From IMG/VR virus record IMGVR_UViG_3300033997_000243, positions 186,001 to 250,000 of that record: DNA of 64,000 nucleotides, one strand, 5' to 3'. The translations under genes and the position numbers were made by a program. The first letter of the stretch is position 1. Every line of letters begins with the position of its first letter. Positions 16,128-55,406 of this stretch are shown piece by piece. The notes beneath the pieces are model-generated. The model was not told where the DNA came from. It worked only from the letters and a program-made list of their open reading frames with translations, and made no database searches.

Positions 16128-19100
16128 TGAAAAGATTAAATGACTTAATGGTAGGTATTCTGAAAGAAAATCCTTTAATGGAAAGTTCACACAGAATAAT
16201 CGATGAATATTTTGTTCGTAATGTAACAAAATTTACTGAACAATTAGAAAGCATACGTACCATAACTCAAGAGACTCCGCAAGAAATTGTGGATGACAGC
16301 ATTCGTCAAATTGGTTTTGATATTCCAAGTTGGATAATGAGAACAAACGGTGAAAATATTCGCCGTTGTTTTTATCACTTGACTCAAGTTTATCAAATTA
16401 ATGGAACTCCTAATTACCCTAAATTTTTAGAGTTCCTTTTAGATCGTGGAATGCGTGTTGTAAATTTATATACGCAAGACTACGTTGAATTTTTCCCACA
16501 ACCGCTAGGTCGTTTAGTTAGTGAAGGTGGTTCTTGGTTTTTAACCACTCACGTAGATCTTGCGGTAATGGCAAATGGAATTCTTGGTCACTATCCTCTG
16601 GAATTGAATGAGCAAGATATTGCTTGGATCAAAACCAACTTAAACTATGAAGCGGCTGAACAGTGGCAAAAAGATGACATCGACTTTGATATTGATCGAA
16701 TGGTGTCTGCTGGAACAGTGTATGGTGTTAATGATGCACTGTATGCTTACATGGTGTTGGATAAGCGAATCATTGATTTGTTTTATCAGTTTGCTCCAAT
16801 AGAAGAAGTGGTACGTGGTATTTACATGACCATTACTGCTCAAGCTAACTTGTACATAACTGGAAGTTTGATTGAAGAACAAATTGATTTCATAGAACTA
16901 AATGGCCCATATCCAACGCAATCAGTTCTTGAATTAAATAGCATGTTAAGTGCAGGACAAGAATATCCTGTATATGGCCGAGTTGTCTGGTCTAATGGAA
17001 TGCAAACTCCAGAAACAGCGGTTATCACTTGGGCAGACCACGGCTATACAATAACCGAAGAAAACAAAATAATATTCGATGAAGTTGAAGCACAATTACG
17101 CAAGGATGTAATCGTCGAATACAAAATTTTAGGTGTTGTTGAAACAACAAGAATAACTTTGTACCAAGGTGATGTCGAATTAGTTCCTTCATCTCTTGTT
17201 ATAAAGGGGCCGAATGTTGTTGCCGAAAATAACACTGTTGCTTTTAACATCATTGGGGATTTTCGTGGGCCGCAAGGTGATGCGAAATTCCGTGAGATCT
17301 ATGATGTAGAAAACGTAAAATTGACTACAAATAGTTCAGATGTAATCATCGAAGGTTTTGATCTTACTGTTAAAAGAATCTTTGAAGATAAAAACATAGT
17401 TGTTCAAGCAGAGTATGAAACAAGTGAAGGTACAAAACTTTATCAGACATTTCCGCTGGTACTTCGTGCTCTACCTAAGCCAATTATTCCAATAGGTGTT
17501 GAATTTGCATTTACTCAAGTTATTTATAACTCTGAAGGTATTATTGTAAACGAAACTCCTCACATTGGCGATTTATTGCAAAACAATTATTACCGTATCA
17601 AAACTACTTTGATCTATAGCGACAATAGTTTAGTTCCAACCGACATGGAAGTAAATTGTTCTAGCTTAGCTATTGTTGTTGAAGCAGACAGAACATTTTT
17701 TGCAAGCGTTGTGAATAGTGACTATGAAAACATTTTTAGTGTTAAGTACACTGAAGGTGAGGAAGTAGTGACGGCTTCTGTCAGCAAGCTTGTTGTTTTT
17801 CCAAAAATAGTTTTGAATAGTTTGGAAATTGTTGGGCCAGATGTTTTGATGGAAGGCAAAACAGAAAACTATTCTGTTCTTGCTCACTGGAGTAATGGCC
17901 AAGTAAGTTCGGTTCCAGAAGCTCAATTGGTAAGTCGTGAAGCATTATTAGGTTCCGAATTTTTATATCCAGTGACTATTGATCGCGGCAGTGTAACTGC
18001 TCCAGTATTAGGAATGACAGCACGATCTCAGTTAACGGCCAGCGTTCAGCGTTATACAGATGGGCATTGGGTTGAAGTTACAAAACTTCTTACTATTAAG
18101 AATAATGATCGTATTGCATCTTCAATAGCAACCATCATGGCAGATCAGGTAACGGAAGGAAACAGAATAGCAATAAACTTCTATGTTACATGGACAGACG
18201 ACAAAGTAACACAAGTTATGCCAACTGCCGTGCGTTTAATAAAACAGGAGAATGGTGTTATTCACAGTGAGGCAGTGCGTGTAGATCCAGATGTTGATAC
18301 AGAAATTGTAGAAACTGGATTTGGCCCACTTCGCATTAAAATGCACCCAACTCAAACTTTTATTGAAACTGAAACTGGATTAGAATGCAGATCTTTAATG
18401 ATCGAGTATGAAGAAAGCGATACGAGTCTTAATGGTTTGTTTAGCATGGAATTCGATTATGATGATCCGTATTCTGCAAATTTAATTTCGGCAAATCGTT
18501 TATTTACAACCGCAGAAAAATTCGTAGGAAGTGAAAGTGTTACTATTCACGTACCTGACGAAATGGCTGAAGGTTCACGACACTTTGCTAAGGCCGTAGT
18601 TCGTTTTGAAAATGGTCTGGATAAAGAAGTTGAAGCCAATTGGAGTGTAGAAGATATTGAAGGTGAGACAGATGATGTTGGTGCTGATGTAAGCGTTAAC
18701 ACATATACCTTACAAAAAATAGTTTATAGCTTAATTGCTTTAGATGAAACAACGCTAATGGATATGTCATTGTCTAACCAAGATTTGACTGCGTTCCAAA
18801 TACGCAATCTTATAAATGGAGATTCAATATTTGCTGAAATGTCAAATCAACCGATTCCAGGACAAACTTGGCCACAAAAACTTTTAATTTTGTTCGCTCA
18901 ATATCCTGAACCTCTTGCCCGTTGTTTAATTCAAACTCGTTTTATAGCCGAAGATGAATTATTTGTATTACGTTGCGGTTTCTTTGCAAAACAAGATGCA
19001 CGTACAATCAAAATCATTAACCGTCCGGTTGAGCCAGATACTCCAATTTTAAGTTGGTACATAACTGGCCCAGTCGAAATAGAAGCGAATCTTTACAACT

Positions 19101-20782
19101 TTTATTCTTACGGTTTAAGTGTTCAATATGCTGATAATGGTGTTGAGTATTTAGTAAGTAATGATTGGGAAGTTGAATTGTATTCCGATGAAACTTTTGA
19201 CCAACGGCGTGAATTGATTCGCACCATTGTATTGCGTGACGGTGACGGAATACTTCCAATGGATAACGATGGAAGTGGCCGTAAAAAAGATGTTGATGAA
19301 CTAACTGCGGAAGAACTGTTAGAGGTTTTACCAACAAGCAGCGTTGTTGACATCGATCAAAATGGTTACTTGTATCCACGTTTAAATGAAAATGCGCGTA
19401 TTGTAGTTACAGCCGTTTATAATGATGGACAACAGCAATTCAGAGAAAATCTTCCAGTTTACATTCGCAAACAAAATACTAGATTGCAGAAAATAGAGGT
19501 AGCTTTAGTTGGGCCAACTGGATCAATAACATTTGACTTTAAAGACAAATTGTTAGATGAACCAAACGCTTGGTCAAACTTGAGTTTGGATGGAGTTGTT
19601 TATTATCAATTCCGTGCTTATTTAACGCGATTTGGAGATCCTGCTCAATACGAATTGGTTGAAAATCTTTTCTGGAAAGCTGAACCTGTAGGCAGTGGCG
19701 TAAGCTTTGACGAGCAAAGCGGCCGACTTTATATTCTTCAACAAACTAACGACAGTGATGTAACAATTGTTGCTTCTTATGAAGAAGAATTTAGAGAAAG
19801 CGAAACAAGTTCAACAGTATTTTTGGAGAGTATAAAGTCATATTCTCTTGTAAAAATAACTGCGACCAAAGCGCTAGATGTTATTGATATTCTTGGTAGT
19901 ACGTTTACAACAAGTGATACAACTTTTTATCCATCTTACCAAGTTTCTCGCCGTGACGGATCTTTGGCAAGTGTTGATGTTGTTTCCTTATCAATAGTTG
20001 AAGCACCTTTAGATATTTCCATAAGTATTGACGGTAAGGGAATAGTAATTCCAAAACGATCAACGGATATAATCATTAAGATTCGTGCTACAGCTGTTGA
20101 AGGTTTACGTACAATCTACAAGGATTTTACGGTAACTATTTTGGCAAGCTTTGTTCCGTTAGAACTACACATAAACAGTAATCCAGCTGGTATTCGTGAT
20201 AATGGAGAATTTTACCTAAAAGCATTTTTAGAAATGCGTGATGGATCTACTTATGATGCAACAACAGATTCTTACTGGCTGTTGGAAACAAAATTGGCAG
20301 GTCTTGAATTAGGTAATAGAACTGGCTTATTGAAAGTTCCTTATGTTGATAAAGACACTGAAATAACCTTTAAAGTTGTGTACACTAGAAACGAGATCGT
20401 GTTTGAAAAAACTCACACAATGATCATTCAATCTAGTTATCCAATTTACTGGGAAGATCCAGTGGCTGCAATCAACGCAACTTATTTCCAGAATGTCATT
20501 GGAAGTGACGAATTCAAAAGATTATTAAGTACAACAGGCGGAAGATTCACTTCATATCCAGCTGCTGCTGAGTATCTTTACTTTGCACATCCGAAAAGTT
20601 TTGGTTTAGCTACGTTCGCCATTATTCCAAGTACAACTGGAGCAATCAATTGGGGCAACATGCAGACACCTGTAGAAGTAACGCGCACCTATATTAATGG
20701 TGTGACTGAACCTTGGTTGATTTATCGTACAGTCAATCGCGGTTTTACTTTAGGTGAATTCAGTGTGGTATATGGGCAGTAA
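16127..20782 (+). CDS. large baseplate wedge protein (gp7-like N-terminus) with tandem Ig-like repeats
   Basis: follows the gp6-like gene; repeated L.I.GP..V.E strands; 1551 aa. Confidence 0.7.
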   Translation: MKRLNDLMVGILKENPLMESSHRIIDEYFVRNVTKFTEQLESIRTITQETPQEIVDDSIRQIGFDIPSWIMRTNGENIRRCFYHLTQVYQINGTPNYPKFLEFLLDRGMRVVNLYTQDYVEFFPQPLGRLVSEGGSWFLTTHVDLAVMANGILGHYPLELNEQDIAWIKTNLNYEAAEQWQKDDIDFDIDRMVSAGTVYGVNDALYAYMVLDKRIIDLFYQFAPIEEVVRGIYMTITAQANLYITGSLIEEQIDFIELNGPYPTQSVLELNSMLSAGQEYPVYGRVVWSNGMQTPETAVITWADHGYTITEENKIIFDEVEAQLRKDVIVEYKILGVVETTRITLYQGDVELVPSSLVIKGPNVVAENNTVAFNIIGDFRGPQGDAKFREIYDVENVKLTTNSSDVIIEGFDLTVKRIFEDKNIVVQAEYETSEGTKLYQTFPLVLRALPKPIIPIGVEFAFTQVIYNSEGIIVNETPHIGDLLQNNYYRIKTTLIYSDNSLVPTDMEVNCSSLAIVVEADRTFFASVVNSDYENIFSVKYTEGEEVVTASVSKLVVFPKIVLNSLEIVGPDVLMEGKTENYSVLAHWSNGQVSSVPEAQLVSREALLGSEFLYPVTIDRGSVTAPVLGMTARSQLTASVQRYTDGHWVEVTKLLTIKNNDRIASSIATIMADQVTEGNRIAINFYVTWTDDKVTQVMPTAVRLIKQENGVIHSEAVRVDPDVDTEIVETGFGPLRIKMHPTQTFIETETGLECRSLMIEYEESDTSLNGLFSMEFDYDDPYSANLISANRLFTTAEKFVGSESVTIHVPDEMAEGSRHFAKAVVRFENGLDKEVEANWSVEDIEGETDDVGADVSVNTYTLQKIVYSLIALDETTLMDMSLSNQDLTAFQIRNLINGDSIFAEMSNQPIPGQTWPQKLLILFAQYPEPLARCLIQTRFIAEDELFVLRCGFFAKQDARTIKIINRPVEPDTPILSWYITGPVEIEANLYNFYSYGLSVQYADNGVEYLVSNDWEVELYSDETFDQRRELIRTIVLRDGDGILPMDNDGSGRKKDVDELTAEELLEVLPTSSVVDIDQNGYLYPRLNENARIVVTAVYNDGQQQFRENLPVYIRKQNTRLQKIEVALVGPTGSITFDFKDKLLDEPNAWSNLSLDGVVYYQFRAYLTRFGDPAQYELVENLFWKAEPVGSGVSFDEQSGRLYILQQTNDSDVTIVASYEEEFRESETSSTVFLESIKSYSLVKITATKALDVIDILGSTFTTSDTTFYPSYQVSRRDGSLASVDVVSLSIVEAPLDISISIDGKGIVIPKRSTDIIIKIRATAVEGLRTIYKDFTVTILASFVPLELHINSNPAGIRDNGEFYLKAFLEMRDGSTYDATTDSYWLLETKLAGLELGNRTGLLKVPYVDKDTEITFKVVYTRNEIVFEKTHTMIIQSSYPIYWEDPVAAINATYFQNVIGSDEFKRLLSTTGGRFTSYPAAAEYLYFAHPKSFGLATFAIIPSTTGAINWGNMQTPVEVTRTYINGVTEPWLIYRTVNRGFTLGEFSVVYGQ

Positions 20783-23201: not shown

Positions 23202-24725
23202 ATGGATGATATTACAATTCGTATTGAAGCATTTGAAAACAGATCTGATCTTGATGGAGCAAGAGCAAAAACTTCAGAATTCGGATCAGATGTTGCTTTC
23301 GTACAAGTAGAAGAACCAGATCCGCTTAATATAAAATTTGCGTACAATGCCCAATCAGGTGTTTTATCTTTAATCCGTGGGCCTGATGATATTATTCAGG
23401 CCACTGGTTTTCTTACGCAAAAAAGTTTGGGAACTGGAAGAAGAGGAAAGAAAGGAAAAAGAGGCAAAGACGGTCGTGATGGGAAAACTGGTTACGATGG
23501 TCGTGATGGAAAATCTGGATGTCCTGGAATTCAAGGTGTAAAAGGAAAGAAAGGACTTCCAGGTCGTGATGCTGATGATGGCCCAATTGGGCCAATAGGT
23601 AAAGCTGGTTGTGGTGGTGCTGAAGGTGAAGAAGGTGAAAGAGGAAATAAAGGAATAATCGGCAATGAAGGATCTCAAGGTTTAATGGGATCTAGTTGCA
23701 AGCAAGGGCCGGATGGCCCTGACGGTGAAAAACCTTTGGAAACAGTTTTATTTTCTGACGTTCCACCAGTAGATAATCTGCTTGCTTTTATTTGGGCAAA
23801 ACCTGTCAACAGAGATCAAGTAGATCCAACAGATCCATTGCCGCCAATAGATACTCCGTCACCTTTAAATGGAAGAGTAGATAGTTTATCAATGAATGTT
23901 CCTCCGGTCGGTGCTGGTTGGTATCAAGCAATTCTTTATTTTAAAGTGAATTCTTTAAGTGGTGGAGTTGGGCCTTTTAACTATAAATGGTCTGGTGATT
24001 TTTCGACAAACGCAAATCTTTCAGTAGTTGATACTGGAATGACATCTGCAAACTTGAATTTGAAGTGTAGAATTTATATTGCTGGAACAGAAACCAGAAA
24101 AATTACTGGTGGAATTCGTTGTACAGTAACAGACGTAGGTAACGGCAACAATCCACTACTGTTAGATGCCACTTACACATTCAACATTGTTGCGACGGCT
24201 TCTGGAGGCGGTGACAGTGGAGGCGGTGGTGGAGGCTGTATCGTTTTTGGTCAACGTGTTAATTTAGTAAATGGTGAGCAAATTCAAGTTCAATCTATTT
24301 TACACGGTGACAGTTTAATCGGCGCAAGCATAGAAAGTTTGCCGGACAGCTCTAATGGAAACTCTAAATTTTTAGATTGGTTCACTTCTGATCTTAAATC
24401 GAAAAATACAACTGTCACGGCTATGTCTGTTAAACACGGAACTTACCATAGTTACTACAAAATAAATAATGTTTTGAAAATAACTTTGGAAGAGAACATG
24501 CTTTGCTTGCGCGGAGGCTATTGGTCTTTTAGACGAGTTAAAGATCTTCGTGTTGGAGACTATTTATATCATCGAACAGAAGGTGCTAAAGAAATTCTCA
24601 GCATTGAACAAATAAGTGAACAAGTTAAGACAGTATCTTTAGATGTTGAGACATCAGACACTTACTATGTTGAAGATTATTTAGTTCACAATCTGGATGT
24701 CGGTGGGCCTGTGATTAAGAAATAG
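23202..24725 (+). CDS. collagen-like tail fibre protein with a C-terminal Hint domain
   Basis: about 33 Gly-X-Y triplets, a beta domain, poly-Gly linker, then CIVFG...LVHN. Confidence 0.8.
   Translation: MDDITIRIEAFENRSDLDGARAKTSEFGSDVAFVQVEEPDPLNIKFAYNAQSGVLSLIRGPDDIIQATGFLTQKSLGTGRRGKKGKRGKDGRDGKTGYDGRDGKSGCPGIQGVKGKKGLPGRDADDGPIGPIGKAGCGGAEGEEGERGNKGIIGNEGSQGLMGSSCKQGPDGPDGEKPLETVLFSDVPPVDNLLAFIWAKPVNRDQVDPTDPLPPIDTPSPLNGRVDSLSMNVPPVGAGWYQAILYFKVNSLSGGVGPFNYKWSGDFSTNANLSVVDTGMTSANLNLKCRIYIAGTETRKITGGIRCTVTDVGNGNNPLLLDATYTFNIVATASGGGDSGGGGGGCIVFGQRVNLVNGEQIQVQSILHGDSLIGASIESLPDSSNGNSKFLDWFTSDLKSKNTTVTAMSVKHGTYHSYYKINNVLKITLEENMLCLRGGYWSFRRVKDLRVGDYLYHRTEGAKEILSIEQISEQVKTVSLDVETSDTYYVEDYLVHNLDVGGPVIKK
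24237..24692 (+). other. Hint (intein-like) domain 1
   Basis: block A C-I-V-F-G; block F/G VSLDVE...YYV..YLVHN; residue after HN is Leu; block B His replaced (TLEE). Confidence 0.85.
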
Positions 24726-26909: not shown

Positions 26910-29900
26910 ATGGCTCGATTACGCATAAGATCAATTTATAACAACAAATGGCTTGATGTTTGTAATCATCCAGTGTCTTTTAGATCTCCAGACAACAGAT
27001 CTTGGATTCCATTTGACATTAAGCGTATGAGTGTGCGTGACGGTGGCAATTTAAACTGGTTAGAAATTGATTGTAAACCCGATCCACTTTTTGATGAACC
27101 GTGTGCGTTCAAACAAATTGGTAGTGTCAATTGTCCAACTGGAATTGACACTATGGAGTTGGGAAGTGGTGATGGAACTGGAAGTGATGGATTACCTTTT
27201 GATCTTATAACAGGTTATCCAGCGGGTTATGATATGCCAGATGCTGGTGACACAGGTTTTATGTTAGAACGTGCGATAGGAAGTCCTCGCGGTTTTGCAC
27301 TTAAAAGACCTGCATTAAACTATGCTCTTGAATATTACGATCCAGAAGGTGTTACAAGTAATCTAGGTCGTGGCAATTATGCGAACCCAAACTATTTGTG
27401 GGCAACTACTTTTAGTGGTGGCGCTCAAATCACTGAAACAATTTATGATCTTGGTCAAGTTGCTGGATGGTACGAAGTAATATTTGCTTCATACGACGAT
27501 GTAGGTATTAGTGTTGACGTTTATTATTTAGGTCAACGTATCGCAACAACGTGTGGTCGTATTAAAGATCGTTACAAAATTGAATTCTTTTTTGATGCAC
27601 TTGCTGGCGAAGGTGAAAGTCGTGTAATGATACGTGTTCGCGGTCAAGAAAGTACACGTTGGACATACATGGTAACTGGGCCAAAACAAATGCTCAGTGT
27701 TTATGGTTTAGATTTAGAAGATCCACTGCATCAGGTTTTAATCAGAACAGATGAATACAGTGGAACTCCTTTATTTCCTGCACCGTGCCACGCAACAGTT
27801 TTTCCTCGTGACTACAAAACAAATGATGGCAAATGGTTTTACGAATTTCACCACTATGTAGGTGAAAATGCAGATCCAAACGAACTTGCCTTAATGGTTA
27901 TTGATTACACAAGTTGGATGAACCTTGATAAATTTGAAGTTTATCACGGAGGCTTGCGTATCGGTAGCACAATGGATCCAAAAAGTTTGTTGGGAATGAT
28001 TCAATTTTTGTGGGAACCAAATCGTTTTAGTATTCCCGTTCCAGATTTAATGATTCGTGTGAGTGCTGATGTTCGTCAATACGGCGAAGATATTATGAGT
28101 TGGTACTACACATTATTCTGTCAAAACACTCCTGGATACAGAGAAAATCCTTGGGACTGTGAAACTCCTGTTGCTGGTTTAAGTAGCATGGGTCACGGTA
28201 GCACCGAAGATAACTATGACATGGATAACGGTGTTGAGAACGGAGTAGTCAGTATTAAAGCAACAGGTTACGGAGATTTTACTTATACTGTAACCGTCTT
28301 TGACATTGACGGAAAATTAGTTGCGTATACTGAAGGTAAGAGAACTACATTTACTCAATTTTTTATAAAGGCGGCTGAACATGGTGATACTCGTAAACGC
28401 ATTGCTGTACGTATTGATGCACCAATCGGAAGTTCTTGGACTTACTTTGTAGGATGTCCAGTAGAATTACTTGATATTGAATTAGATGATAAAACAATTC
28501 CAGTTTGTAATGATGAATTTGAGATCACTGTTAATGATGTGCAGTGTGTAAAAAGTGATTTTGCTACATTTACAGTTACTTCGAGCTTACCGGTTCCAAA
28601 TGATGTTCATGTAAGTGTTTCGACGCAAGACGGAACTGCGAAAAGTTCTGGCGGTGCAGGATCTGATTATGCTGGATTACCAGACATTTATGGTATTTTT
28701 CAGGATAATGATTCACCCACAGAAACCTCAAACTTCGATAGTAAGACACTGCGTTTTGGTGTACAGAATTGGCCGAATGCTAGTGTTGTATTTGATAATG
28801 GTTGGGGAAATTTGGCAAACCCTGAGCATAAAAATGCTGCGTCTACAAATGATCCTTCTCATATAATGGGAAGAAACACCAACTACTGGCAAAACTTGGA
28901 AACAAGTTCATTCGCTAATCTTTCGCCTGATGCAAAATTAGTTGTGAATGCTTGGAAACATCGTTTAGGAAATTTGAATGGCAAAAGTTGGATTATCTTA
29001 ACGGATAGTGCAGATCCTGCTGGTGATTTTTCTGAAATATGTTCCAACTTTATTCAAAGCATGATAAACATTTATGGCATGAATGTTCATGTTGTGCGTG
29101 ATGATTATACAACTCAAAATTTTACACCATATGATATTATTACGATTGCGAATAGTAGACGTTGGGGTGAAGTTGGTCAATTCAGTGCGGCTGGTGTGCA
29201 TTATATGGCGCGGGTACTTCAAGGATATAAAAGTCCTGTTGGTATTGCCATTGCAGATCAAGTTAAACAAAATCGAGTGCTTCATTGTTATTTTAGAGCG
29301 ACAAACCAACGTCTTGCCCAAAACATTTTAATTCGTGATGTAATGAATTGTTTTGTTGGTGTAAAGTTTTACTGGAACGAGCAGCTGACAAAAAATCCGA
29401 CTAATGCTGATGTTACGCTTGGTCGTCATCTTGCTCAATATCCTGATACTCCATTGTTGACAGGTATTTCTGAAGCAAAAGCTGATTCAGATTTTACTGT
29501 ATTGGATGTTCTTTATATTCCAGCACCGACAACAGTTGATCCTGATTACGTTGCGAAATCTGAAATAGTTACTATACCAACTGGGGCAACTTCAGCTCAA
29601 GTTAAGGTAACAACTTTAGATCCAAAAGCAAGCCCTATTGGGAAAAATTTCTATTTGAACTTAACTGGAACTGACAGCGGAACAATTGTAGATGCTCAAG
29701 GTATTGCAACTTTTGCTAACTCCAATACTTCACCACAACCAGTAGGTGATTTGAACTTCTCACCCTCTTATTTTACTTCACACAGTAAAAATACTTGGGA
29801 TAACTCCGGTGTTAGAGTTTATGGAAGTGCGGTTGCGTTTGCAATAGATTATTCCGGCTTTCCTACCCAAACAAATCCAGGTGGCGTAGAACAGCCTGGA

Positions 29901-30269
29901 AAAATTGCTGTTGTTGAAGCAAATGGTGGTATGGGTACGCAAGCTCAACTTAATAAATACTATACTGCTGGTGATTATCCGTATGATCCTGCACTTACTT
30001 ATGTTTATAAGTGGGAATACTCAGTTAAATTTAATGATGGAAATAGAAAGCTTACTGTTCCGTCGATAGCAACTACTTACGATGTAATGAACAGAATAAC
30101 ATCGTTTGCTGTGAATCAATCGAACGAAGAACATAGCGGATCAGGTTACTCGCTTGTTGTAGAGGCAATATTATGGATCAAAGCAAGTAATGGTGTTGAA
30201 ATGAAAAGTAACTTGGTTACAATCAATATTGTTAGTGATCCAATTTTTGCAGGTGGAAACATTCCGTAA
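26910..30269 (+). CDS. multidomain virion/fibre protein: three beta-sandwich repeats plus a split Calx-beta domain
   Basis: repeated ...V(Y/F).G..IA.T...IRV...W.Y...P modules; T.DGTAKS ... DY...V.IP.G. Confidence 0.7.
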   Translation: MARLRIRSIYNNKWLDVCNHPVSFRSPDNRSWIPFDIKRMSVRDGGNLNWLEIDCKPDPLFDEPCAFKQIGSVNCPTGIDTMELGSGDGTGSDGLPFDLITGYPAGYDMPDAGDTGFMLERAIGSPRGFALKRPALNYALEYYDPEGVTSNLGRGNYANPNYLWATTFSGGAQITETIYDLGQVAGWYEVIFASYDDVGISVDVYYLGQRIATTCGRIKDRYKIEFFFDALAGEGESRVMIRVRGQESTRWTYMVTGPKQMLSVYGLDLEDPLHQVLIRTDEYSGTPLFPAPCHATVFPRDYKTNDGKWFYEFHHYVGENADPNELALMVIDYTSWMNLDKFEVYHGGLRIGSTMDPKSLLGMIQFLWEPNRFSIPVPDLMIRVSADVRQYGEDIMSWYYTLFCQNTPGYRENPWDCETPVAGLSSMGHGSTEDNYDMDNGVENGVVSIKATGYGDFTYTVTVFDIDGKLVAYTEGKRTTFTQFFIKAAEHGDTRKRIAVRIDAPIGSSWTYFVGCPVELLDIELDDKTIPVCNDEFEITVNDVQCVKSDFATFTVTSSLPVPNDVHVSVSTQDGTAKSSGGAGSDYAGLPDIYGIFQDNDSPTETSNFDSKTLRFGVQNWPNASVVFDNGWGNLANPEHKNAASTNDPSHIMGRNTNYWQNLETSSFANLSPDAKLVVNAWKHRLGNLNGKSWIILTDSADPAGDFSEICSNFIQSMINIYGMNVHVVRDDYTTQNFTPYDIITIANSRRWGEVGQFSAAGVHYMARVLQGYKSPVGIAIADQVKQNRVLHCYFRATNQRLAQNILIRDVMNCFVGVKFYWNEQLTKNPTNADVTLGRHLAQYPDTPLLTGISEAKADSDFTVLDVLYIPAPTTVDPDYVAKSEIVTIPTGATSAQVKVTTLDPKASPIGKNFYLNLTGTDSGTIVDAQGIATFANSNTSPQPVGDLNFSPSYFTSHSKNTWDNSGVRVYGSAVAFAIDYSGFPTQTNPGGVEQPGKIAVVEANGGMGTQAQLNKYYTAGDYPYDPALTYVYKWEYSVKFNDGNRKLTVPSIATTYDVMNRITSFAVNQSNEEHSGSGYSLVVEAILWIKASNGVEMKSNLVTINIVSDPIFAGGNIP

Positions 30270-30272
30270 TCA

Positions 30273-30292
30273 AAAGGGGCTTCGGCCCCTTT
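30273..30292 (+). terminator. C(UUCG)G hairpin, possibly bidirectional terminator
   Basis: AAAGGGGC-TTCG-GCCCCTTT. Confidence 0.65.
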
Positions 30293-30311
30293 CACCAAGA
30301 AGAAGAATTTT

Positions 30312-33300
30312 ATGGCAGGAACTCCATTCACAACTATTTACGAAAATTTAGGATCTAATGCGACAACTGTTCCTGGAATTTCGTGGAAGTTTGACCATGA
30401 ATACATTATCTACACGATTGAAAGAAACGCAGATGATGAAGTAGGTGTTGTTTATATAAATACACATGCGGCTTCTCTTCGAGCTATTGATCGTGGATTT
30501 TTAGCTGTAACGGTTGACGCATGGATTGTTCTTGATCGTCAAACAATGCAGATTAAAAGCGAATCACGTAAAGGTGATGCTTGTCCAATTTTAAAAGTTT
30601 TAGAGCGCCCGATTACAGTTGGCGTATCGGACTTTACTTCAGAAAATTGGGAAGTTTATTATTCAGGCCCTGGAGTTGTACAATTAAATATTGACTGGCC
30701 TGATGATTATGAATACGTTATCTTTGTTCACGCAACAGAGCCTCCTGGTCGCTATCCAGATCTTAAGTGGTCTATATGCGCTCACTTCTTTTGTCCGGCA
30801 GCAATGAATGCGAGTGATATAAATGGCGGTGGTTATTTAAAACCGATTGAAGGTGCGTCAGGTGTAATGATGTATCGTGGTCGGTTTTCTAGTCCAACTG
30901 GCAGACATATTCGTAGATTCGACAAAGGTGATGGTTTAATAGCGTATATACTTCGCAGAAAATTTAGAACTGATACCAAAGCAACAACTGAATTTAATAG
31001 TTGGAAGCAACACACGTTTGCACTTCCTAATGGCATACAAGCTGGTGGAAATTGGCGTGATGCTAAACCTTATGCTTGGCCTGATGATACTGAAATAATG
31101 GTAGTGTCACAAGATCCTAAAGGTAGCACAGAAATGGCTACTTCTTATTATTTCACAGATTCAAACATTCAGAATACAACTCAAATAAATTGGCGTGAAC
31201 GCGGTTTATTGTATGATGCGGGTTATGATCATTATATAGAGTTGTTGAAACCTATTTGGCAAAACCGTGGAACCAAACATATCCGTTCAAGTGATGGAAG
31301 AATTTTTGCAGCGTGGGAAAAACTACCCACGTTAGATGTTCCACCGCCAGAACCTCCACCGCCAGTTGATCCTGTAATTGATTGTCGCGCTTGCGTACCA
31401 GCTGGATCTTTGTGGGAGCAAACTGCAAGTATTGAAGTTCGTTTTGTTAAGCCTGATGATTGGCAATTACGCAATTATCGCTATGATTGGCACGGTGACA
31501 TCGGCAACGGTTCTGTGGAATTAATTGGAACCGAAGCTAATGGAAGAATTGCAAAAATTCGTTTTGTAAAAATGTTAGAACCTACCGATGATGGAATAAT
31601 GTTTCCTATCAATGTGGCGGTTACAGTTTATGATATGGATTATGCTTCGGCTGGAGTACAAGATAGTGATACAGCAATCATCGAATTTGAATTACCTTGT
31701 ATTGTAGTGGCGAATCAGCCGGATATAAGTATAGAGGATATTACTGTACTTGAGCAAGACATCAATCATGTCGTACAGGTTACAGTTTCTTTGTCTGAAC
31801 CAGCAACTGCGGAAGCACTAACAGTAGATTGGCAAACTCGTGATGGTACTGCGAAAAGCGATCTGAGTGTTAAAACACTTGCTAGGGATGATTTAGGTAA
31901 TCCATTTATAACCGTTATAGAAAGTTTAGATAGTAAAGTCAGGACTTATATAGATGGTTGTTTTCCAAAATGGTATGCTGCAAGTTTTTACGACAGATTG
32001 AATACACCTAAATTTCAAACAACATTTTTATTCACGCAAAACATAATTAACTGGTTATCCAGAAATAAAGTTGGAGGTCAAGTTTTATTATTAGGTGATA
32101 AGACGAACGATCCTTACAATGTTAAACTATCTAACGCAAATGATTTTTTCCCTGTATTCGATGCCGCAGCAACAGCCACAGGAAGAACTTTAGTTGTTGA
32201 ATATGTCTATGATATAGTTCCATCTAAAGCATATTTCGATTCCTTCGATTGCATTATTTATATAGGCAGTCACTATACAGGCGATCAAGTTAATTCACCT
32301 GAATTTATTACTGCACTTGTAGAAAGTCATTTAGGTGGAATCGGAGCAGCATTTATATCTGATCATGGTGTTGATGATATTAATGGGGCTGGTTTTTTCA
32401 AAGGCGTTAATGAAGTTTTGATCAATGCTTTTGGTATAGGACTAAAGGGCAATATAGATCGCGGATCTATGGTACTTACTGTGGAAAACGCAAAAGCTAC
32501 TTTAGGTGATCATCCATTGTGGGCCGGATTAAGCGGCCAAATAGATGCAGGATCTTCAGAAGCGTATGTTGATGCAATAGATAGTGAACCGGATTATATA
32601 AGTGGTCGAGGAACTTTAGTCTTTGCTGTCGGTGAGCAACACAAAATAATCGAGGTTACAATTGTTGGTGATACTACAATTGAGAATGACGAATATTTTG
32701 AAATAATGATCTCGAATAATAGTCGAGGTCAGATAGTAAAAAATGTTGGTCGTGTTACACTTCAAGATGATGATGCTCAACCTTGCGGTGTCACAACAGG
32801 ATCTGGTGGTACTGGTGTCACAGAAACAGTTCATAATATGGGATCTGAATCAGGCCAAGTAACAGTTGGTTTTGATATGTTCGGTGTTCCAGATATGATG
32901 GAAATTTTTTACGATGGAGTACGCGTAGCCGCAACAAGCAGAGATTTAAGTAATCCATACCCAAGTGGAACTGGACGCTATTACAATCTTCCAAATGGAA
33001 ATAAAGATCTTCCAACTGAAGTAAGTGGTGCTGGTACTCTATCATTTTATTATGAAGGGCCACCAAACAAACCTTCAACAATCATGATTCGTATGACTGG
33101 GCCAGACGGAACTGCATGGAATTACAATTTAGATTGTCCGATTCCTGTTGAGGAGCCGCCACCGCCAGCAGTAACAATTGCTGGAATAAGATTTAGAAAT
33201 TTAGATCCAGCACCTGGAGCAGGAGCAATTGCAATAGGTTATATTGATTTTATAAAATCGGATAGCACTATTTACGATTTTGGTAATGTACTGCAAGATA

Positions 33301-34226
33301 ACTATGTAAATTGTACTTTTGAGCATGGATATACAGAAGGACAACCTGTGCAATATCAAAATAGTTATAAGCCGCGTCAAGCAATTAATGGCTATCAAGA
33401 AGGATCTCAATGCAGTCACCGCGATTACTATGGCCCATTCACAAATGATGCGTACTTATTAATTCGTTTATCTCAAATGACGGATATAATAGGTTTCAAC
33501 ATGATGGATTGGCATTATTGTAATGACAATGGCGCTCCAGTGTTTCGCGCTCCAGCACTTCCATACAGCATAGATCTTTTAGATCAAAATGATAATGTGA
33601 TTTGCACACAAACAGTAACAAGTTATGTTAGTCCGGCGGCAGATACAGTTGGTTACGTTCCAATACAATTCCCTTGCGATCCTGTAATTGGTGGAACAAG
33701 TGTAGGTGGCGGAAGTGCAGATTGTTTTGCATACGGAACTTTGATAACTATGTCTGACGGTTTTGAAAAAGAAATCGAAGATATTGTTATTGGAGAAACA
33801 GTTAAAACTTTTTCCATAGAAGGATTAACTGATGCAAATGCTGAAAATCCTGTGGACTATTTAACTTGGTCAACTTACGATCTGCAAATAAAAGAATCTA
33901 CTGCCGCAGTAACATCAGTTTCTTATCACGAAACTAATCTACATCATAAGATTTGGATAGAAGGCAAAATAGATCCTATAAGGGTCACTGCGGAACATCC
34001 ATTCTTAGTTAAGTTTTCTGATAGAAATGATTGGGTATTTGATTACGCTCGTTATCTTAAAGCAGGTGATACTGTTTTAGATTCAAGTGGTCGGCAAATA
34101 AAAGTTCTATCGAATCAATTGATATACGGAAATATTAAAACTGTCCGTCTGGATGTTGAAACGCTAGATACTTATTTTGCTGGTGGAATTCTTGTACACA
34201 ACAAAGATACTACAATACAACAGTAG
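30312..34226 (+). CDS. multidomain fibre/adhesin protein with a split Calx-beta domain and a C-terminal Hint domain
   Basis: Pro linkers; ISIEDITVLE..DGTAKS / DY..G.L.FA.GE..K.I.V.I.GD...E.DE.F; ends CFAYG...LVHN. Confidence 0.8.
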   Translation: MAGTPFTTIYENLGSNATTVPGISWKFDHEYIIYTIERNADDEVGVVYINTHAASLRAIDRGFLAVTVDAWIVLDRQTMQIKSESRKGDACPILKVLERPITVGVSDFTSENWEVYYSGPGVVQLNIDWPDDYEYVIFVHATEPPGRYPDLKWSICAHFFCPAAMNASDINGGGYLKPIEGASGVMMYRGRFSSPTGRHIRRFDKGDGLIAYILRRKFRTDTKATTEFNSWKQHTFALPNGIQAGGNWRDAKPYAWPDDTEIMVVSQDPKGSTEMATSYYFTDSNIQNTTQINWRERGLLYDAGYDHYIELLKPIWQNRGTKHIRSSDGRIFAAWEKLPTLDVPPPEPPPPVDPVIDCRACVPAGSLWEQTASIEVRFVKPDDWQLRNYRYDWHGDIGNGSVELIGTEANGRIAKIRFVKMLEPTDDGIMFPINVAVTVYDMDYASAGVQDSDTAIIEFELPCIVVANQPDISIEDITVLEQDINHVVQVTVSLSEPATAEALTVDWQTRDGTAKSDLSVKTLARDDLGNPFITVIESLDSKVRTYIDGCFPKWYAASFYDRLNTPKFQTTFLFTQNIINWLSRNKVGGQVLLLGDKTNDPYNVKLSNANDFFPVFDAAATATGRTLVVEYVYDIVPSKAYFDSFDCIIYIGSHYTGDQVNSPEFITALVESHLGGIGAAFISDHGVDDINGAGFFKGVNEVLINAFGIGLKGNIDRGSMVLTVENAKATLGDHPLWAGLSGQIDAGSSEAYVDAIDSEPDYISGRGTLVFAVGEQHKIIEVTIVGDTTIENDEYFEIMISNNSRGQIVKNVGRVTLQDDDAQPCGVTTGSGGTGVTETVHNMGSESGQVTVGFDMFGVPDMMEIFYDGVRVAATSRDLSNPYPSGTGRYYNLPNGNKDLPTEVSGAGTLSFYYEGPPNKPSTIMIRMTGPDGTAWNYNLDCPIPVEEPPPPAVTIAGIRFRNLDPAPGAGAIAIGYIDFIKSDSTIYDFGNVLQDNYVNCTFEHGYTEGQPVQYQNSYKPRQAINGYQEGSQCSHRDYYGPFTNDAYLLIRLSQMTDIIGFNMMDWHYCNDNGAPVFRAPALPYSIDLLDQNDNVICTQTVTSYVSPAADTVGYVPIQFPCDPVIGGTSVGGGSADCFAYGTLITMSDGFEKEIEDIVIGETVKTFSIEGLTDANAENPVDYLTWSTYDLQIKESTAAVTSVSYHETNLHHKIWIEGKIDPIRVTAEHPFLVKFSDRNDWVFDYARYLKAGDTVLDSSGRQIKVLSNQLIYGNIKTVRLDVETLDTYFAGGILVHNKDTTIQQ
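33723..34202 (+). other. Hint (intein-like) domain 2
   Basis: block A CFAYGT.I.M.DG..K.IEDI..G; block B TAEHPF; block G LVHN; residue after HN is Lys. Confidence 0.9.
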
Positions 34227-35833: not shown

Positions 35834-36748
35834 ATGGACACACTATTAATAGGGCTAGTTAGTGAGTGTTTGAGTAAAGCTGTAGCTTTGGGACTGACGG
35901 CATCCAATAAAATAGTTTTAGCTGTAGGATCTACACAAAACGAAACAGCTTTAATTTATGTCAGTGCTGTTGAACCCACTGGGCCAGAACTTCCACTAAA
36001 TTTTATGTGGATAGTTTCAGATTCTAACAGTGCAGATTATCAGAAGATTCTGAGAAGAACTTCAAAGACTGCAAACTTTCCTTACCAAAATACTTACGAA
36101 TATCCAACGGTATATGCAAACGTAATAAATACATTTCCTGTATATGATGCTGTTGACGGTTTTATTCGCCCTGCATTAGAAAATCATAGATATTCTGTAG
36201 GAAATGCTCATGCTGCTACTCCAACTCAAATTGGAGCAGTTAATATAAATGGCGATACAATGCTTGGCAGTTTAAAAGCCAGAGCAAATTGGAGATCTGT
36301 TCCATTACAACCAGAAGAATTTATTCCTCTGCAAAAAATGACAGATAGCCTTAATAGTCAGACTCAAGGCTTTTACACTATTCTAATGCAGTTATTTAAT
36401 AGAATAGGTGCAGTAGAAACAACTAACGCTCAGTTAGCTCAAAGAATTACAGCTTTAGAGACAACTGGTGGTGGCCAAATAGATCCAAATCTTGTTCCAC
36501 GTACTTATGTACATGAACAAGCAGAAGCAGAACCTACTTGGATTATAAATCACAATCTAGGTACTCAATTCTTAATTGTACAACATTGGGTTCATATTAA
36601 TACACCTGATGGGATAAAATTGGAATTGGCTGGAGCGGAACAAGTTGTTATAGTAAATGACAATTTTGTTTTAATTGATCATACGATACCAGCAACAGGA
36701 ATAGTTGTGTTGTTGGAAGCAGGGTTAGAAGTAGTTCCAGAGGAATAA
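35834..36748 (+). CDS. virion structural protein with H.Q...W.I.HNLG domain
   Basis: GN.H..TP.QIGA..GD.M.G.L fibre motifs, coiled coil, HNLG domain. Confidence 0.65.
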   Translation: MDTLLIGLVSECLSKAVALGLTASNKIVLAVGSTQNETALIYVSAVEPTGPELPLNFMWIVSDSNSADYQKILRRTSKTANFPYQNTYEYPTVYANVINTFPVYDAVDGFIRPALENHRYSVGNAHAATPTQIGAVNINGDTMLGSLKARANWRSVPLQPEEFIPLQKMTDSLNSQTQGFYTILMQLFNRIGAVETTNAQLAQRITALETTGGGQIDPNLVPRTYVHEQAEAEPTWIINHNLGTQFLIVQHWVHINTPDGIKLELAGAEQVVIVNDNFVLIDHTIPATGIVVLLEAGLEVVPEE

Positions 36749-54055: not shown

Positions 54056-54516
54056 AATACGCTCTAATTGTTTTATCAATGTTTCTTTTTGGATGTGCTA
54101 GTGCGCCAGAGCCAAGAGAAATACAGACCAAAAAGATTGCAGAATTCGTACACAAAGAAGTAACTCCTGTGAGTATTCCAGAAGCCTTCACGCATGATGT
54201 AGGTAAGTACAAAGACGCCAACGGTAAAACATGGGCGCTTGTTGATCCAGATGATTTGGTAAAAATAGAGCAAGCGTATATCAGTGCTGAATCTAATGCA
54301 GCACTTGTGGAACAGGCCAATTTAATTTTAGAATTAACTGTCCAACGCGCAAACTTAATTCGTGAGCTTGCAGAGCTAGAGGAATACAGAGCATTGAAAA
54401 TGGAAGTTGTTTTAAAGGATGAAAGGGAAAGCAGAAGGGAAGAACAGTTGCGGAATAGTATTGAAAGCATAACACTGAAAATAATTACTGCACTTGCATT
54501 AGTCGTAGCAATATGA
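54052..54516 (+). CDS. lipoprotein, putative outer-membrane spanin
   Basis: start MKYAL at 54052; lipobox LFG-C; coiled coil; hydrophobic C-terminus. Confidence 0.6.
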   Translation: MKYALIVLSMFLFGCASAPEPREIQTKKIAEFVHKEVTPVSIPEAFTHDVGKYKDANGKTWALVDPDDLVKIEQAYISAESNAALVEQANLILELTVQRANLIRELAELEEYRALKMEVVLKDERESRREEQLRNSIESITLKIITALALVVAI

Positions 54517-54551
54517 GAAAGGGGAGCCATTACGGTTCCCTTTTCTTTTTT
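54517..54551 (+). terminator. terminator ending the late operon at the convergent junction
   Basis: GGGGAGCC...GGTTCCCT hairpin with a long U-tract. Confidence 0.75.
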
Positions 54552-54563
54552 CAACAAGTAAAT

Positions 54564-55397: not shown

Positions 55398-55406
55398 AAT
55401 TTACCC

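What the first reader, a model, noticed from the sequence alone, without database searches (positions are those of the whole stretch)
28518..32775. Two Calx-beta domains split at the identical loop (after DGTAKS) by homologous alpha/beta inserts
Seen: the Calx-beta N-half ends DGTAKS at 28646 and 31859, and the C-half resumes at (D/E)PDY at 29538 and 32586. The inserts (about 297 and 242 aa) resemble each other (VFDNGW/YIDGCF, IILTD/LLLGD, YDII/FDCII, DTPLLTG/DHPLWAG) and look flavodoxin- or GATase-like. Inference: Calx-beta serves as a display scaffold for exchangeable receptor-binding or enzymatic domains.
Basis: partly seen in the sequence, partly recalled or inferred. Interest (0 to 1): 0.6.

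Follow-up and report, generated by a model that had tools for sequence, protein, structure and literature searches.

The report
Alpha/beta head nested in Calx-beta
Two neighbouring tail-module proteins of a 320-kb jumbo phage each carry a sugar-enzyme-like alpha/beta domain inserted into exactly the same loop of a Calx-beta sandwich, and one of the two inserts is the fastest-evolving part of the locus, which points to a host-recognition head on a rigid pedestal.

Summary
In P0001 (window 26910-30269) and P0002 (30312-34226), a Calx-beta domain is interrupted between DGTAKS and (D/E)PDY by 297 and 242 residues. This is the DGTAxA|GxDY loop of NCX1 CBD1.

- **One domain from two halves.** Removing the inserts in silico restores single full-length Calx-beta matches. 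In the AlphaFold model of P0002 the halves pack as one sandwich (Z 11.3, 2.2 A over 104 residues against CBD1).
- **The insert.** It is an autonomous ThuA-like / class I glutamine-amidotransferase-like domain. It is closest in shape to the glycopeptide-binding N-terminal domain of the IMPa peptidase.
- **The family.** It has about 200 representative clusters. Most members are free-standing at the N-terminus of about 600-aa jumbo-phage virion proteins (phrog_11065, phiKZ gp201). The Calx-nested form makes up about a quarter and has essentially one origin.
- **The two inserts are distant homologues.** Profile score is 36.5 against a shuffled maximum of 27.1, and both models share the same top PDB match.
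- **Empty site.** Phage NCTB's P0002 orthologue has an uninterrupted loop.
- **Divergence.** Against a 98-100% identical relative, the P0002 insert falls to 70-75% nucleotide identity, and the changes lie in loops around a conserved pocket.

Best reading: a receptor-binding head on a Calx-beta pedestal. Exchange of unrelated cassettes is not supported.

The parts
26910..30269 (+). Gene for P0001 (1119 aa). It has an N-terminal phrog_26008 region (aa 1-532), a split Calx-beta with insert, and a C-terminal region of unknown fold.
28512..28646 (+). P0001 Calx-beta N-half (aa 535-579), ending in DGTAKS.
   Evidence: Pfam profile positions 22-59. Local Calx HMM positions 4-59, 23 bits.
28647..29537 (+). 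P0001 insert (aa 580-876). It is a divergent, conserved copy of the ThuA-like alpha/beta domain. It lacks the family's D-H and H residues.
   Evidence: Family profile E 2e-4 to 7e-4 and hhalign E 2.2e-4. Shuffle control. Top PDB match is IMPa 5kdv_A, Z 7.0, from a low-confidence model. 99.3% aa identity to the close relative.
29538..29723 (+). P0001 Calx-beta C-half (aa 877-938), starting at DPDY. The acidic Ca2+-site residues are not kept.
   Evidence: Local Calx HMM positions 52-115, 27 bits; 66 bits as one domain after in-silico excision. BLASTP to Calx C-halves, E 7e-7.
30312..34226 (+). Gene for P0002 (1304 aa). It has an N-terminal region, a split Calx-beta with insert, a beta-sandwich module shared with P0001, a further region of unknown fold, and a C-terminal Hint domain.
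31707..31859 (+). P0002 Calx-beta N-half (aa 466-516), ending in DGTAKS.
   Evidence: Local Calx HMM positions 2-53, 33 bits. Aligns to NCX1 CBD1 up to DGTANA.
31860..32585 (+). P0002 insert (aa 517-758). It is a canonical member of the ThuA-like / IMPa-N-domain-like alpha/beta family and keeps the conserved residues D526, D548, K553, D596, D684, H685, N700, R717, H734, S749 and E750.
   Evidence: AF2 model. IMPa 5kdv_A Z 11.1 over 176 residues; 1t0b Z 8.2. Atlas top match is an M60/TCAF_N protein. 197 representative clusters. Residue conservation.
31904..32503 (+). Divergence hot spot inside the P0002 insert: 70-75% nt identity to a relative that is 98-100% identical elsewhere.
32586..32777 (+). 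P0002 Calx-beta C-half (aa 759-822), starting at EPDY. It keeps the acidic motifs that align with those of NCX1 and CALX CBD1.
   Evidence: Pfam profile positions 54-118, E 1e-9. Local HMM positions 53-117, 56 bits. Alignments.
33723..34223 (+). C-terminal Hint (intein-like) domain of P0002 (aa 1138-1304). It starts with Cys and ends ..VHN followed by Lys.
   Evidence: PT-HINT, Hom_end_hint and Intein_splicing matches. Homologous to the C-terminus of ORF 23202-24725.

Best explanation
**Setting.** P0001 and P0002 are adjacent large proteins of the tail-fibre/baseplate module of a complete 319.5-kb jumbo phage. Each contains a nested domain: an alpha/beta domain of about 245-300 residues, of the ThuA-like / class I glutamine-amidotransferase-like fold, inserted into one loop of a Calx-beta sandwich. 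The loop is the one between DGTAxA and GxDY. The two Calx halves close into one sandwich, so the alpha/beta domain projects from one tip of it.

**Shown**
- The architecture and the exact insertion point.
- The autonomy of the insert family, which is mostly free-standing in jumbo-phage virion proteins such as phiKZ gp201 and RP12 ORF136.
- Essentially a single origin of the nested form.
- An empty-site orthologue in phage NCTB.
- Very uneven divergence of the P0002 insert compared with its scaffold.

**Inferred**
- The P0002 insert is a host-surface (probably glycan) binding head whose specificity evolves quickly.
- Its conserved polar residues sit at the C-terminal ends of the parallel strands, which is the usual ligand site of this fold. 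The variable patches lie in the loops around them.
- The Calx-beta is a rigid pedestal. In P0002 it is probably stabilised by Ca2+, because the insert leaves the sandwich next to residues that align with the CBD1 Ca2+ ligands.
- The P0001 copy is an older, diverged paralogue that has lost the D-H and H residues. It likely has a constant binding or structural role.
For: **Architecture**
- Exact coordinates and half-domain matches.
- Fold of the reassembled Calx-beta: NCX1 CBD1 3gin_A, Z 11.3, rmsd 2.2 A, 104 of 116 residues aligned, spanning model residues 3..358.

**Insert fold**
- IMPa 5kdv_A residues 109-300: Z 11.1, 176 residues aligned.
- ThuA-like 1t0b: Z 8.2.
- Atlas top match is an M60-like peptidase carrying TCAF_N.
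- ThuA Pfam hits in 11 of 100 domain segments, plus OST48_N and GIFT.
- Family profile against PDB 2gk3: E 0.0023.
- The IMPa N-terminal domain holds a ligand-binding exosite (PMC10550946).

**Family and evolution**
- 197 representative clusters. Of 132 with the full domain, 31 are nested and 101 are free-standing, starting near residue 41.
- The free-standing members match phrog_11065, 'virion structural protein'. phiKZ gp201 holds the domain at E 4.9e-57.
- The nested form needs 2 changes on the tree, against a shuffled mean of 28.
- NCTB_131 has an empty site. PaBG_248 has a P0001-like N-terminus with a canonical insert.

**Homology of the two inserts**
- (profile comparison and shuffle control).
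- The same top PDB chain for both models.
- The NCTB_132 predicted structure matches the P0002 model over 489 columns, E 6.6e-13.

**Specificity role**
- Nucleotide identity to a close relative is 70-75% in the P0002 insert and 98-100% around the locus.
- Amino-acid identity is 75.6% in the insert, 94.2% in the N-half and 98.7% in the C-half. dN is 0.184 in the insert and 0.006-0.026 in the two Calx halves.
- The 59 changes cluster after the DGxFPKxY motif and after strands 1-3. Only 3 of 43 family-conserved positions change.

**Tail context**
-.
Against: - No binding or enzymatic activity has been tested, and the host is unknown.
- The P0002 model is of moderate confidence only (pLDDT 68.5). 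The P0001 model is poor (49.8), so the packing of its halves rests on sequence.
- dS is saturated (about 1.2) across a recombinant patch covering P0002 aa 331-1030. Part of the divergence is imported rather than selected in place, and dN/dS in the insert is 0.15, not above 1.
- The free-standing relatives (phiKZ gp201) sit beside a virion-packaged helicase gene, not tail genes. Their place in the virion is not known: gp201 is not mentioned in the main text of the phiKZ cryo-EM atlas paper.
- The strongly conserved D/D/H/H/E/R set could equally mark an enzyme or a metal site.
Confidence: 0.55

Rival explanations
1. One reading: the Calx-beta loop is a docking site into which different, unrelated receptor-binding or enzymatic cassettes are exchanged.
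For: - Presence or absence at orthologous sites: NCTB_131 is empty while P0002 is filled.
- PaBG_248 combines a P0001-like N-terminus with a P0002-type insert and carries an extra piece of about 220 aa nested inside the insert.
- A recombinant patch spans the module.
Against: - All 31 nested representatives, together with P0001, NCTB_132, PaBG_248 and JA33_092, carry the same domain family at the same HMM position.
- The nested copies form essentially one clade.
- No heterologous domain was found at the site.
Confidence: 0.15
2. The insert is an enzyme, for example a hydrolase, lyase or esterase acting on capsule, LPS or another surface polymer. The conserved D596, D684-H685, H734 and S749-E750 would act as catalytic or metal-binding residues at the position of the ancestral nucleophile elbow.
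For: - About 25 residues are at least 90% conserved across 132 representatives that share only about 25-30% identity, including an acidic/His cluster.
- These residues follow strands 1 and 4, where class I GATases, peptidase E and ThuA-like proteins have their active sites (secondary structure; fold matches).
- Several family members carry carbohydrate-related partner domains such as 3keto-disac_hyd and CBM-like modules.
Against: - There is no Cys-His-Glu triad.
- The closest structural relative, the IMPa N-terminal domain, is a non-catalytic exosite domain.
- Related GIFT and OST48_N domains are non-enzymatic (general knowledge).
- P0001's copy has lost the D-H and H residues yet is kept at 99% identity.
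Confidence: 0.25
3. The insert has a purely structural role, such as oligomerisation or attachment to other baseplate or fibre proteins. The local divergence would be only a hitch-hiking recombinant patch.
For: - GATase-like domains serve as oligomerisation or protein-interaction modules elsewhere, for example the GH42 trimerisation domain and IFT52 GIFT (general knowledge).
- dS is raised over the whole patch aa 331-1030, not only in the insert.
- P0001's insert is highly conserved.
Against: - Within the same patch, the Calx halves have dN/dS of 0.01-0.02 and 94-99% aa identity, while the insert has 75.6% identity and dN about 7 to 30 times higher.
- The changes and indels concentrate in loops on one face of the domain, both between close relatives and across the family.
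Confidence: 0.15
4. The two Calx halves are not one domain. They might be independent remnants, or they might pair between different subunits by domain swapping.
For: - Only a monomer was modelled.
- The P0001 model is of low confidence, and its halves align to NCX1 only at Z 5.1.
Against: - In the P0002 model the halves superpose on CBD1 at 2.2 A over 104 residues.
- Excision restores a full-length HMM match that scores higher than the sum of the halves.
- An orthologue with the uninterrupted domain exists.
Confidence: 0.04

Closest known systems
Calx-beta domain (Pfam PF03160; NCX1 and CALX CBD1, PDB 3gin, 2dpk, 3ead)
   Same: - The same beta-sandwich (Z 11.3, 2.2 A, 33% identity over 104 residues).
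- The DGTA...DY motif.
- In P0002, the acidic D/E motifs and the terminal DDD that align with the CBD1 motifs.
   Different: - Known Calx-beta domains are continuous. Here 242-297 residues forming a separate alpha/beta domain sit between DGTAxA and GxDY.
- A full-text search for Calx-beta together with 'domain insertion' gave one paper, on the adhesion receptor ADGRV1, which I did not open. This is not proof that the arrangement is undescribed.
- P0001's copy has lost the acidic residues.
N-terminal domain of the IMPa / TCAF-type M60-like peptidases (PDB 5kdv, 7jtv; Pfam PF18650, PF27016)
   Same: - Best structural match of both inserts: Z 11.1 over 176 residues for P0002 and Z 7.0 over 175 residues for P0001.
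- The Atlas top match is an M60-like peptidase with TCAF_N.
- The IMPa domain carries a ligand-binding exosite (PMC10550946).
   Different: - There is no detectable sequence relationship (4-9% identity) and no Pfam hit.
- The context differs: a secreted peptidase there, a phage tail protein here.
- Whether the ligand site is at an equivalent position was not tested.
ThuA-like / class I glutamine-amidotransferase-like superfamily (Pfam ThuA PF06283; PDB 1t0b, 2gk3; peptidase E S51; GIFT / OST48_N)
   Same: - Three-layer alpha/beta fold with parallel strands.
- Weak but repeated sequence hits: ThuA in 11 of 100 members (best E 1.1e-4) and 2gk3 at E 0.0023.
- Fold matches.
   Different: - There is no Cys-His-Glu triad. 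A conserved T-D-H-G follows strand 4 instead.
- It has its own N-terminal beta-hairpin and the DGGFPKxYN motif.
- P0002 itself does not reach any Pfam threshold.
phrog_11065 'virion structural protein' (phiKZ gp201, Ralstonia phage RP12 ORF136, Pseudomonas phage Noxifer gp229)
   Same: The same domain family by sequence: E 1e-17 to 1e-57.
   Different: - In these proteins the domain is free-standing at residues of about 41-295 of about 600-aa proteins, with no Calx-beta around it.
- Their genes lie beside a virion helicase gene rather than tail-fibre genes.
- Function and place in the virion are unknown.

Membership tests
Calx-beta (PF03160) | Sequence match to the family model above its curated cut-off | tested here: met
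   - P0002: 39-43.8 bits against a cut-off of 27.
- P0001 alone is below the Pfam cut-off (17.8-20.6 bits). It scores 49 bits as two halves and 66 bits after in-silico excision against a local HMM built from 405 Calx-beta domains.
Calx-beta (PF03160) | Seven-stranded beta-sandwich that superposes on CBD1 | tested here: met
   - P0002 model: 3gin_A, Z 11.3, rmsd 2.2 A, 104 of 116 residues, spanning both halves.
- P0001: inconclusive. The model is poor and Z is 5.1.
Calx-beta (PF03160) | One continuous domain | tested here: not met
   Both copies are interrupted at HMM position 52/53 by 242 and 297 residues. They are Calx-beta domains with a nested insertion.
Calx-beta (PF03160) | Acidic Ca2+-coordinating residues as in NCX1 CBD1 | tested here: inconclusive
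   - P0002 keeps the D of PDY, D-x(3)-E-x-D-E and the terminal DDD, all aligned with the CBD1/CALX motifs. These residues are invariant in its homologues.
- P0001 lacks them.
- Which CBD1 residues bind Ca2+ is taken from memory of the CBD1 structures. No binding was tested.
Class I glutamine amidotransferase-like / ThuA-like | Three-layer alpha/beta fold of the superfamily | tested here: met
   - 1t0b: Z 8.2 over 145 residues.
- Peptidase E and cyanophycinase-like hits.
- 2gk3: E 0.0023 with the family profile.
Class I glutamine amidotransferase-like / ThuA-like | Sequence membership in Pfam ThuA (PF06283) | tested here: inconclusive
   11 of 100 family segments hit ThuA at E <= 1 (best 1.1e-4). 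P0002 and P0001 themselves give no hit.
Class I glutamine amidotransferase (catalytic) | Cys-His-Glu triad with Cys at the nucleophile elbow | tested here: not met
   No conserved Cys. The position after strand 4 carries conserved T-D-H-G in the family and A-x-Q in the P0001 group.
IMPa N-terminal domain / TCAF_N | Sequence match to PF18650 or PF27016 | tested here: not met
   No Pfam hit at E <= 10 for either insert. There is only a fold resemblance.
phrog_11065 virion structural protein | Sequence match to the PHROG model | tested here: inconclusive
   - P0002 does not list phrog_11065 at E <= 0.01.
- Its insert profile retrieves proteins that match phrog_11065 at E 1e-116 to 1e-170. A nested member, P0090, matches at 2.8e-19.
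Hint / intein-like domain (C-terminus of P0002) | Cys1, TxxH block, terminal HN | tested here: met
   - PT-HINT at 27.1 bits, just under its 27.7 cut-off, plus two other Hint families.
- The sequence shows CFAYG.., TAEHP and ..VHN.
- The residue after HN is Lys, so protein splicing is not expected (inference).

The most novel reading that the evidence does not exclude
The nested module could be a Ca2+-dependent adsorption switch that uses a host-recognition head common to jumbo phages. The head leaves the Calx-beta sandwich directly beside the residues that align with the CBD1 Ca2+ ligands. Ca2+ occupancy would then set the rigidity or orientation of the head. The same head family, free-standing in phiKZ gp201-type virion proteins, would be a widespread and so far unrecognised receptor-binding (or surface-glycan-processing) module of jumbo phages.
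Probability: 0.15. Interest if true: 0.7.

Novelty: new variant of a known kind. Interest (0 to 1): 0.5.

Why it matters
- **A candidate specificity determinant.** Host-recognition proteins of jumbo phages are mostly unannotated. This work names a concrete, bounded domain (P0002 aa 517-758) as the likely specificity determinant of one lineage.
- **A wider family.** It links that domain to about 200 clusters of uncharacterised virion proteins, including phiKZ gp201, and places the family in the ThuA / GATase-like superfamily, next to a known glycopeptide-binding exosite domain.
- **A clean case of domain nesting.** There is an empty-site orthologue, a single origin, a diverged paralogue in the neighbouring gene and a second-order nested insertion in the PaBG lineage. 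This makes it useful for studying how phage tail proteins gain modules, and for engineering heads onto a stable pedestal.

Tried and rejected
- **BLASTP between the two inserts:** not significant (E 0.4).
- **hhalign of narrow insert profiles:** E 0.65 and 0.31. The signal appeared only with the 132-member profile. In a genome-wide search, that profile does not reach E 0.05 for P0001.
- **AlphaFold of the P0001 segment:** poor model, pLDDT 49.8. No coordinates are available in the script box.
- **ESM Atlas feature search with the P0001 insert:** no usable hit.
- **tblastn of the P0001 insert against GenBank phages:** no match at E <= 1. megablast of the locus: no match.
- **Single-sequence scans of IMG/VR:** gave only the one close relative.
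- **Pfam on either insert alone:** nothing.
- **Pfam on the extra nested piece of the PaBG lineage:** nothing.
- **Literature:**
  - The one paper holding both 'Calx-beta' and 'domain insertion' is about the receptor ADGRV1 and was not opened.
  - The listed results of a two-of-three-term search on Calx-beta, jumbo phage and tail fiber contained none with 'Calx-beta'.
  - gp201 does not appear in the main text of the phiKZ atlas paper.
  - The gp201/gp203 numbers in the other papers refer to different phages.
- **Weak match set aside:** a fungal galectin matched the N-terminal hairpin of the family profile at E 0.088. I treated this as chance.
- **Not used:** read mapping, complex prediction and alternative genetic codes.

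Full report
**Setting.** The window is positions 186001-250000 of a complete 319,518-bp virus record with direct terminal repeats. The finding lies in two adjacent + strand genes:
- P0001: window 26910-30269, 1119 aa.
- P0002: window 30312-34226, 1304 aa.

Upstream lie a large tail protein (phrog_14098) and three collagen-like tail-fibre genes, and another tail-fibre gene lies downstream. The same gene order occurs in Phage NCTB, Dickeya phage JA33, Pseudomonas phage PaBG and Salmonella phage Sen-NF. In all of these the neighbouring genes are annotated as tail or tail-fibre proteins.

**The observation.**
- The coordinates are exact. DGTAKS ends at nt 28646 and nt 31859, (D/E)PDY starts at nt 29538 and nt 32586, and the inserts are 297 and 242 residues.
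- Pfam sees the N-half of Calx-beta in P0001 and the C-half in P0002. It sees both halves when P0002 is cut to 465-835.
- I built a local Calx-beta HMM (118 positions) from 405 uninterrupted domains of unrelated proteins. It matches P0002 at HMM 2-53 (aa 466-516) and HMM 53-117 (aa 758-822). It matches P0001 at HMM 4-59 (aa 535-589) and HMM 52-115 (aa 875-938).
- Removing residues 517-758 or 580-876 in a script gives single full-length matches of 110 and 66 bits. This is more than the sum of the halves. An alternative cut in P0001 (591-876) scores lower, at 55 bits.
- In NCX1 CBD1, the residues aligned to the two sides of the P0002 break are neighbours in the chain (..DGTANA | GSDY..).
- In the whole genome, the half-domain profiles find only these two proteins, and each finds the other.

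**Do the halves make one domain?**
- The AlphaFold model of P0002 465-835 was built from an alignment of 9 sequences. It has pLDDT 68.5 and pTM 0.63.
- In an exhaustive structural search, the best match is NCX1 CBD1 (3gin_A): Z 11.3, rmsd 2.2 A, 104 of 116 residues, 33% identity, spanning model residues 3 to 358. That span is possible only if the two halves pack together.
- For P0001 the model is poor (pLDDT 49.8) and the corresponding match is weak (Z 5.1). For that copy the claim rests on sequence.

**What the insert is.**
- The next-best structural match of the P0002 model is residues 109-300 of the IMPa metallopeptidase: Z 11.1 over 176 residues. A ThuA-like protein (1t0b) follows at Z 8.2 over 145 residues.
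- The Atlas search puts an M60-like peptidase with a TCAF_N domain first.
- The poor P0001 model has the same IMPa chain as its best match out of 48,161 (Z 7.0), followed by S51 peptidase E structures.
- A profile of the P0002-type insert (A3) found 197 representative clusters among 1.84 billion proteins.
- Of 100 domain segments, 11 hit Pfam ThuA (best E 1.1e-4). Others hit OST48_N, DUF7408 and IFT52_GIFT.
- The family profile hits PDB 2gk3 at E 0.0023. From memory, 2gk3 is a class I GATase-like protein of unknown function.
- There is no Cys-His-Glu triad. The family instead keeps D526, D548-G-G-F-P-K-x-Y-N, D596, T-D684-H685-G, N700, R717, H734-P-L and S749-E750 (P0002 numbering).
- By the model's secondary structure, D596 and D684-H685 directly follow parallel strands 1 and 4.
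- A published description places a ligand-bound exosite in the IMPa N-terminal domain (PMC10550946).

**Distribution and history.**
- Of 132 representatives with the whole domain, 101 have it free-standing. It typically starts at residue 41 of proteins of about 640 aa. The other 31 have it between Calx-beta halves.
- The free-standing proteins are phrog_11065, 'virion structural protein'. They include RP12 ORF136, Noxifer gp229 and phiKZ gp201.
- On a maximum-likelihood tree of the domain, the nested state needs 2 changes, against a shuffled mean of 28. The clade holding all 31 nested copies has 32 leaves. The nesting therefore arose essentially once.
- Phage NCTB's orthologue of P0002 aligns to P0002 aa 12-514 and then directly to aa 761-837. 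A four-residue loop stands where P0002 has the insert. This is an empty site.
- PaBG gp248 has a P0001-like N-terminal part. Its insert is a canonical P0002-type domain that is itself interrupted by about 220 further residues of unknown kind.

**Are the two inserts homologous?**
- Pairwise and narrow-profile comparisons fail.
- The 132-member profile matches the P0001 group at E 2e-4 to 7e-4 in a targeted search.
- hhalign gives E 2.2e-4 over 197 collinear columns. The score of 36.5 exceeds all 200 column-shuffled controls (mean 14.6, sd 2.8, maximum 27.1) and the reversed control (14.6).
- Further support:
  - both models share the same top PDB chain;
  - the predicted structure of NCTB_132 carries a P0001-type insert by sequence and matches the P0002 model at E 6.6e-13 over 489 columns;
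  - the insertion point is identical.
- I take homology as likely. The P0001 group has replaced the family's D-H with x-Q and the H of GDHPL with T.

**Evidence on function.**
- A close relative (IMG/VR contig UViG_3300024308_000188) is 98-100% identical in nucleotides across most of the locus.
- Identity drops to 86-88% over window 31304-33403, and to 70-75% at 31904-32503, inside the P0002 insert.
- Amino-acid identity is 75.6% in the insert, 94.2% in the Calx N-half and 98.7% in the C-half. dN is 0.184 in the insert and 0.006-0.026 in the two Calx halves.
- dS is high (0.5-1.2) over aa 331-1030, so this stretch is a recombinant patch. dN/dS in the insert is 0.15.
- P0001's insert is 99.3% identical.
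- The 59 amino-acid changes cluster at aa 556-569, 598-612, 629-638 and 654-658. These follow the DGxFPKxY motif and strands 1-3. Only 3 of 43 family-conserved positions differ.
- The same stretches carry the indels among more distant homologues.
- A conserved pocket ringed by variable loops, on a conserved pedestal, in a tail-fibre gene cluster, is the pattern expected of a receptor-binding head. This is an inference. An enzyme acting on a surface polymer, or a structural role, cannot be excluded.

**The scaffold.** P0002's Calx-beta keeps the acidic motifs that align with those of CBD1 and CALX: the D of PDY, D-x(3)-E-x-D-E and the terminal DDD. These are invariant in its homologues. From memory of the CBD1 structures, these are the Ca2+ ligands and they lie at the tip where the insert emerges. 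Ca2+ stabilisation of the junction is therefore plausible but untested. P0001's scaffold lacks them.

**Comparison with what is known.** Calx-beta, the ThuA/GATase-like fold and nested domains are all known. I could not find the following described anywhere:
- this particular nesting;
- the domain family itself, which has no Pfam model and only a PHROG labelled 'virion structural protein';
- its behaviour as the divergence hot spot of a jumbo-phage tail protein.

I rate it a new variant of a known kind.

**Method notes.** The in-silico excision was done inside a script, on a phage structural protein. No alternative genetic code was used.

Noticed in passing
window 33723-34223 (P0002 aa 1138-1304) and window 24237-24698 (ORF 23202-24725, aa 346-499): Two tail-module proteins end in homologous Hint (intein-like) domains: BLASTP E 7e-19, and both run from a Cys to ..LVHN. 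In P0002 the residue after HN is Lys, so splicing is unlikely. Self-cleavage, or transfer of the mature C-terminus to another molecule, seems more likely. Relatives are annotated 'intein domain protein' (NCTB).
   Followed up: partly
window 27432-27683 (P0001 aa 175-258) and window 32820-33140 (P0002 aa 837-943): P0001 and P0002 share a beta-rich module of about 100 aa (BLASTP E 2e-5). This is the stretch of P0002 that hits phrog_26008. PaBG gp248 has two copies. No Pfam family was found.
   Followed up: partly
window 31304-33403 (P0002 aa 331-1030): This is a recombinant patch relative to IMG/VR contig UViG_3300024308_000188. dS is 0.5-1.2 here and 0.03-0.17 in most of the other segments compared, though the 45-codon P0001 Calx N-half reaches 0.39.
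   Followed up: yes
L009 (PaBG gp248 aa 617-836); also representatives P0201, P0218 and P0210: In the PaBG lineage the nested alpha/beta domain is itself interrupted by about 220 residues, after the DGGFPK motif region. This is a domain within a domain within a domain. The extra piece has no Pfam match.
   Followed up: partly
L020 (phiKZ 208214-210163, gp201) and L008 (Noxifer gp229): The free-standing form of the domain sits in a conserved cluster with a small protein and a virion-associated DEAD/SNF2 helicase gene (phiKZ gp201-gp203; Noxifer gp229-gp231). This is not a tail-fibre context. Its place in the virion is unknown.
   Followed up: partly
L001 (Phage NCTB genes 131 and 132): The domain arrangement is shuffled relative to this phage. 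The C-terminal Hint domain sits on the P0001 orthologue (gene 132) in NCTB, but on P0002 here. The NCTB P0002 orthologue (gene 131) has neither the insert nor the Hint domain.
   Followed up: partly
window 26910-27027 (P0001 aa 1-39): The ESM Atlas holds this protein starting at residue 40. Alignments to Dickeya JA33 gp093 and PaBG gp248 begin at residue 1, which favours the longer reading.
   Followed up: partly
window ~14000 and ~54500-56000: GC skew changes sign and the coding strand switches at both places. They bound the long + strand block that holds the tail module. No tRNA genes are present in the window.
   Followed up: no
window 35834-36748: A 304-aa ORF just downstream of the tail-fibre genes matches phrog_24148, labelled 'HNH endonuclease' (E 3e-28). 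It also matches phrog_13325, which hits the big tail protein at 16127-20782 as well. The endonuclease label may be misleading.
   Followed up: no
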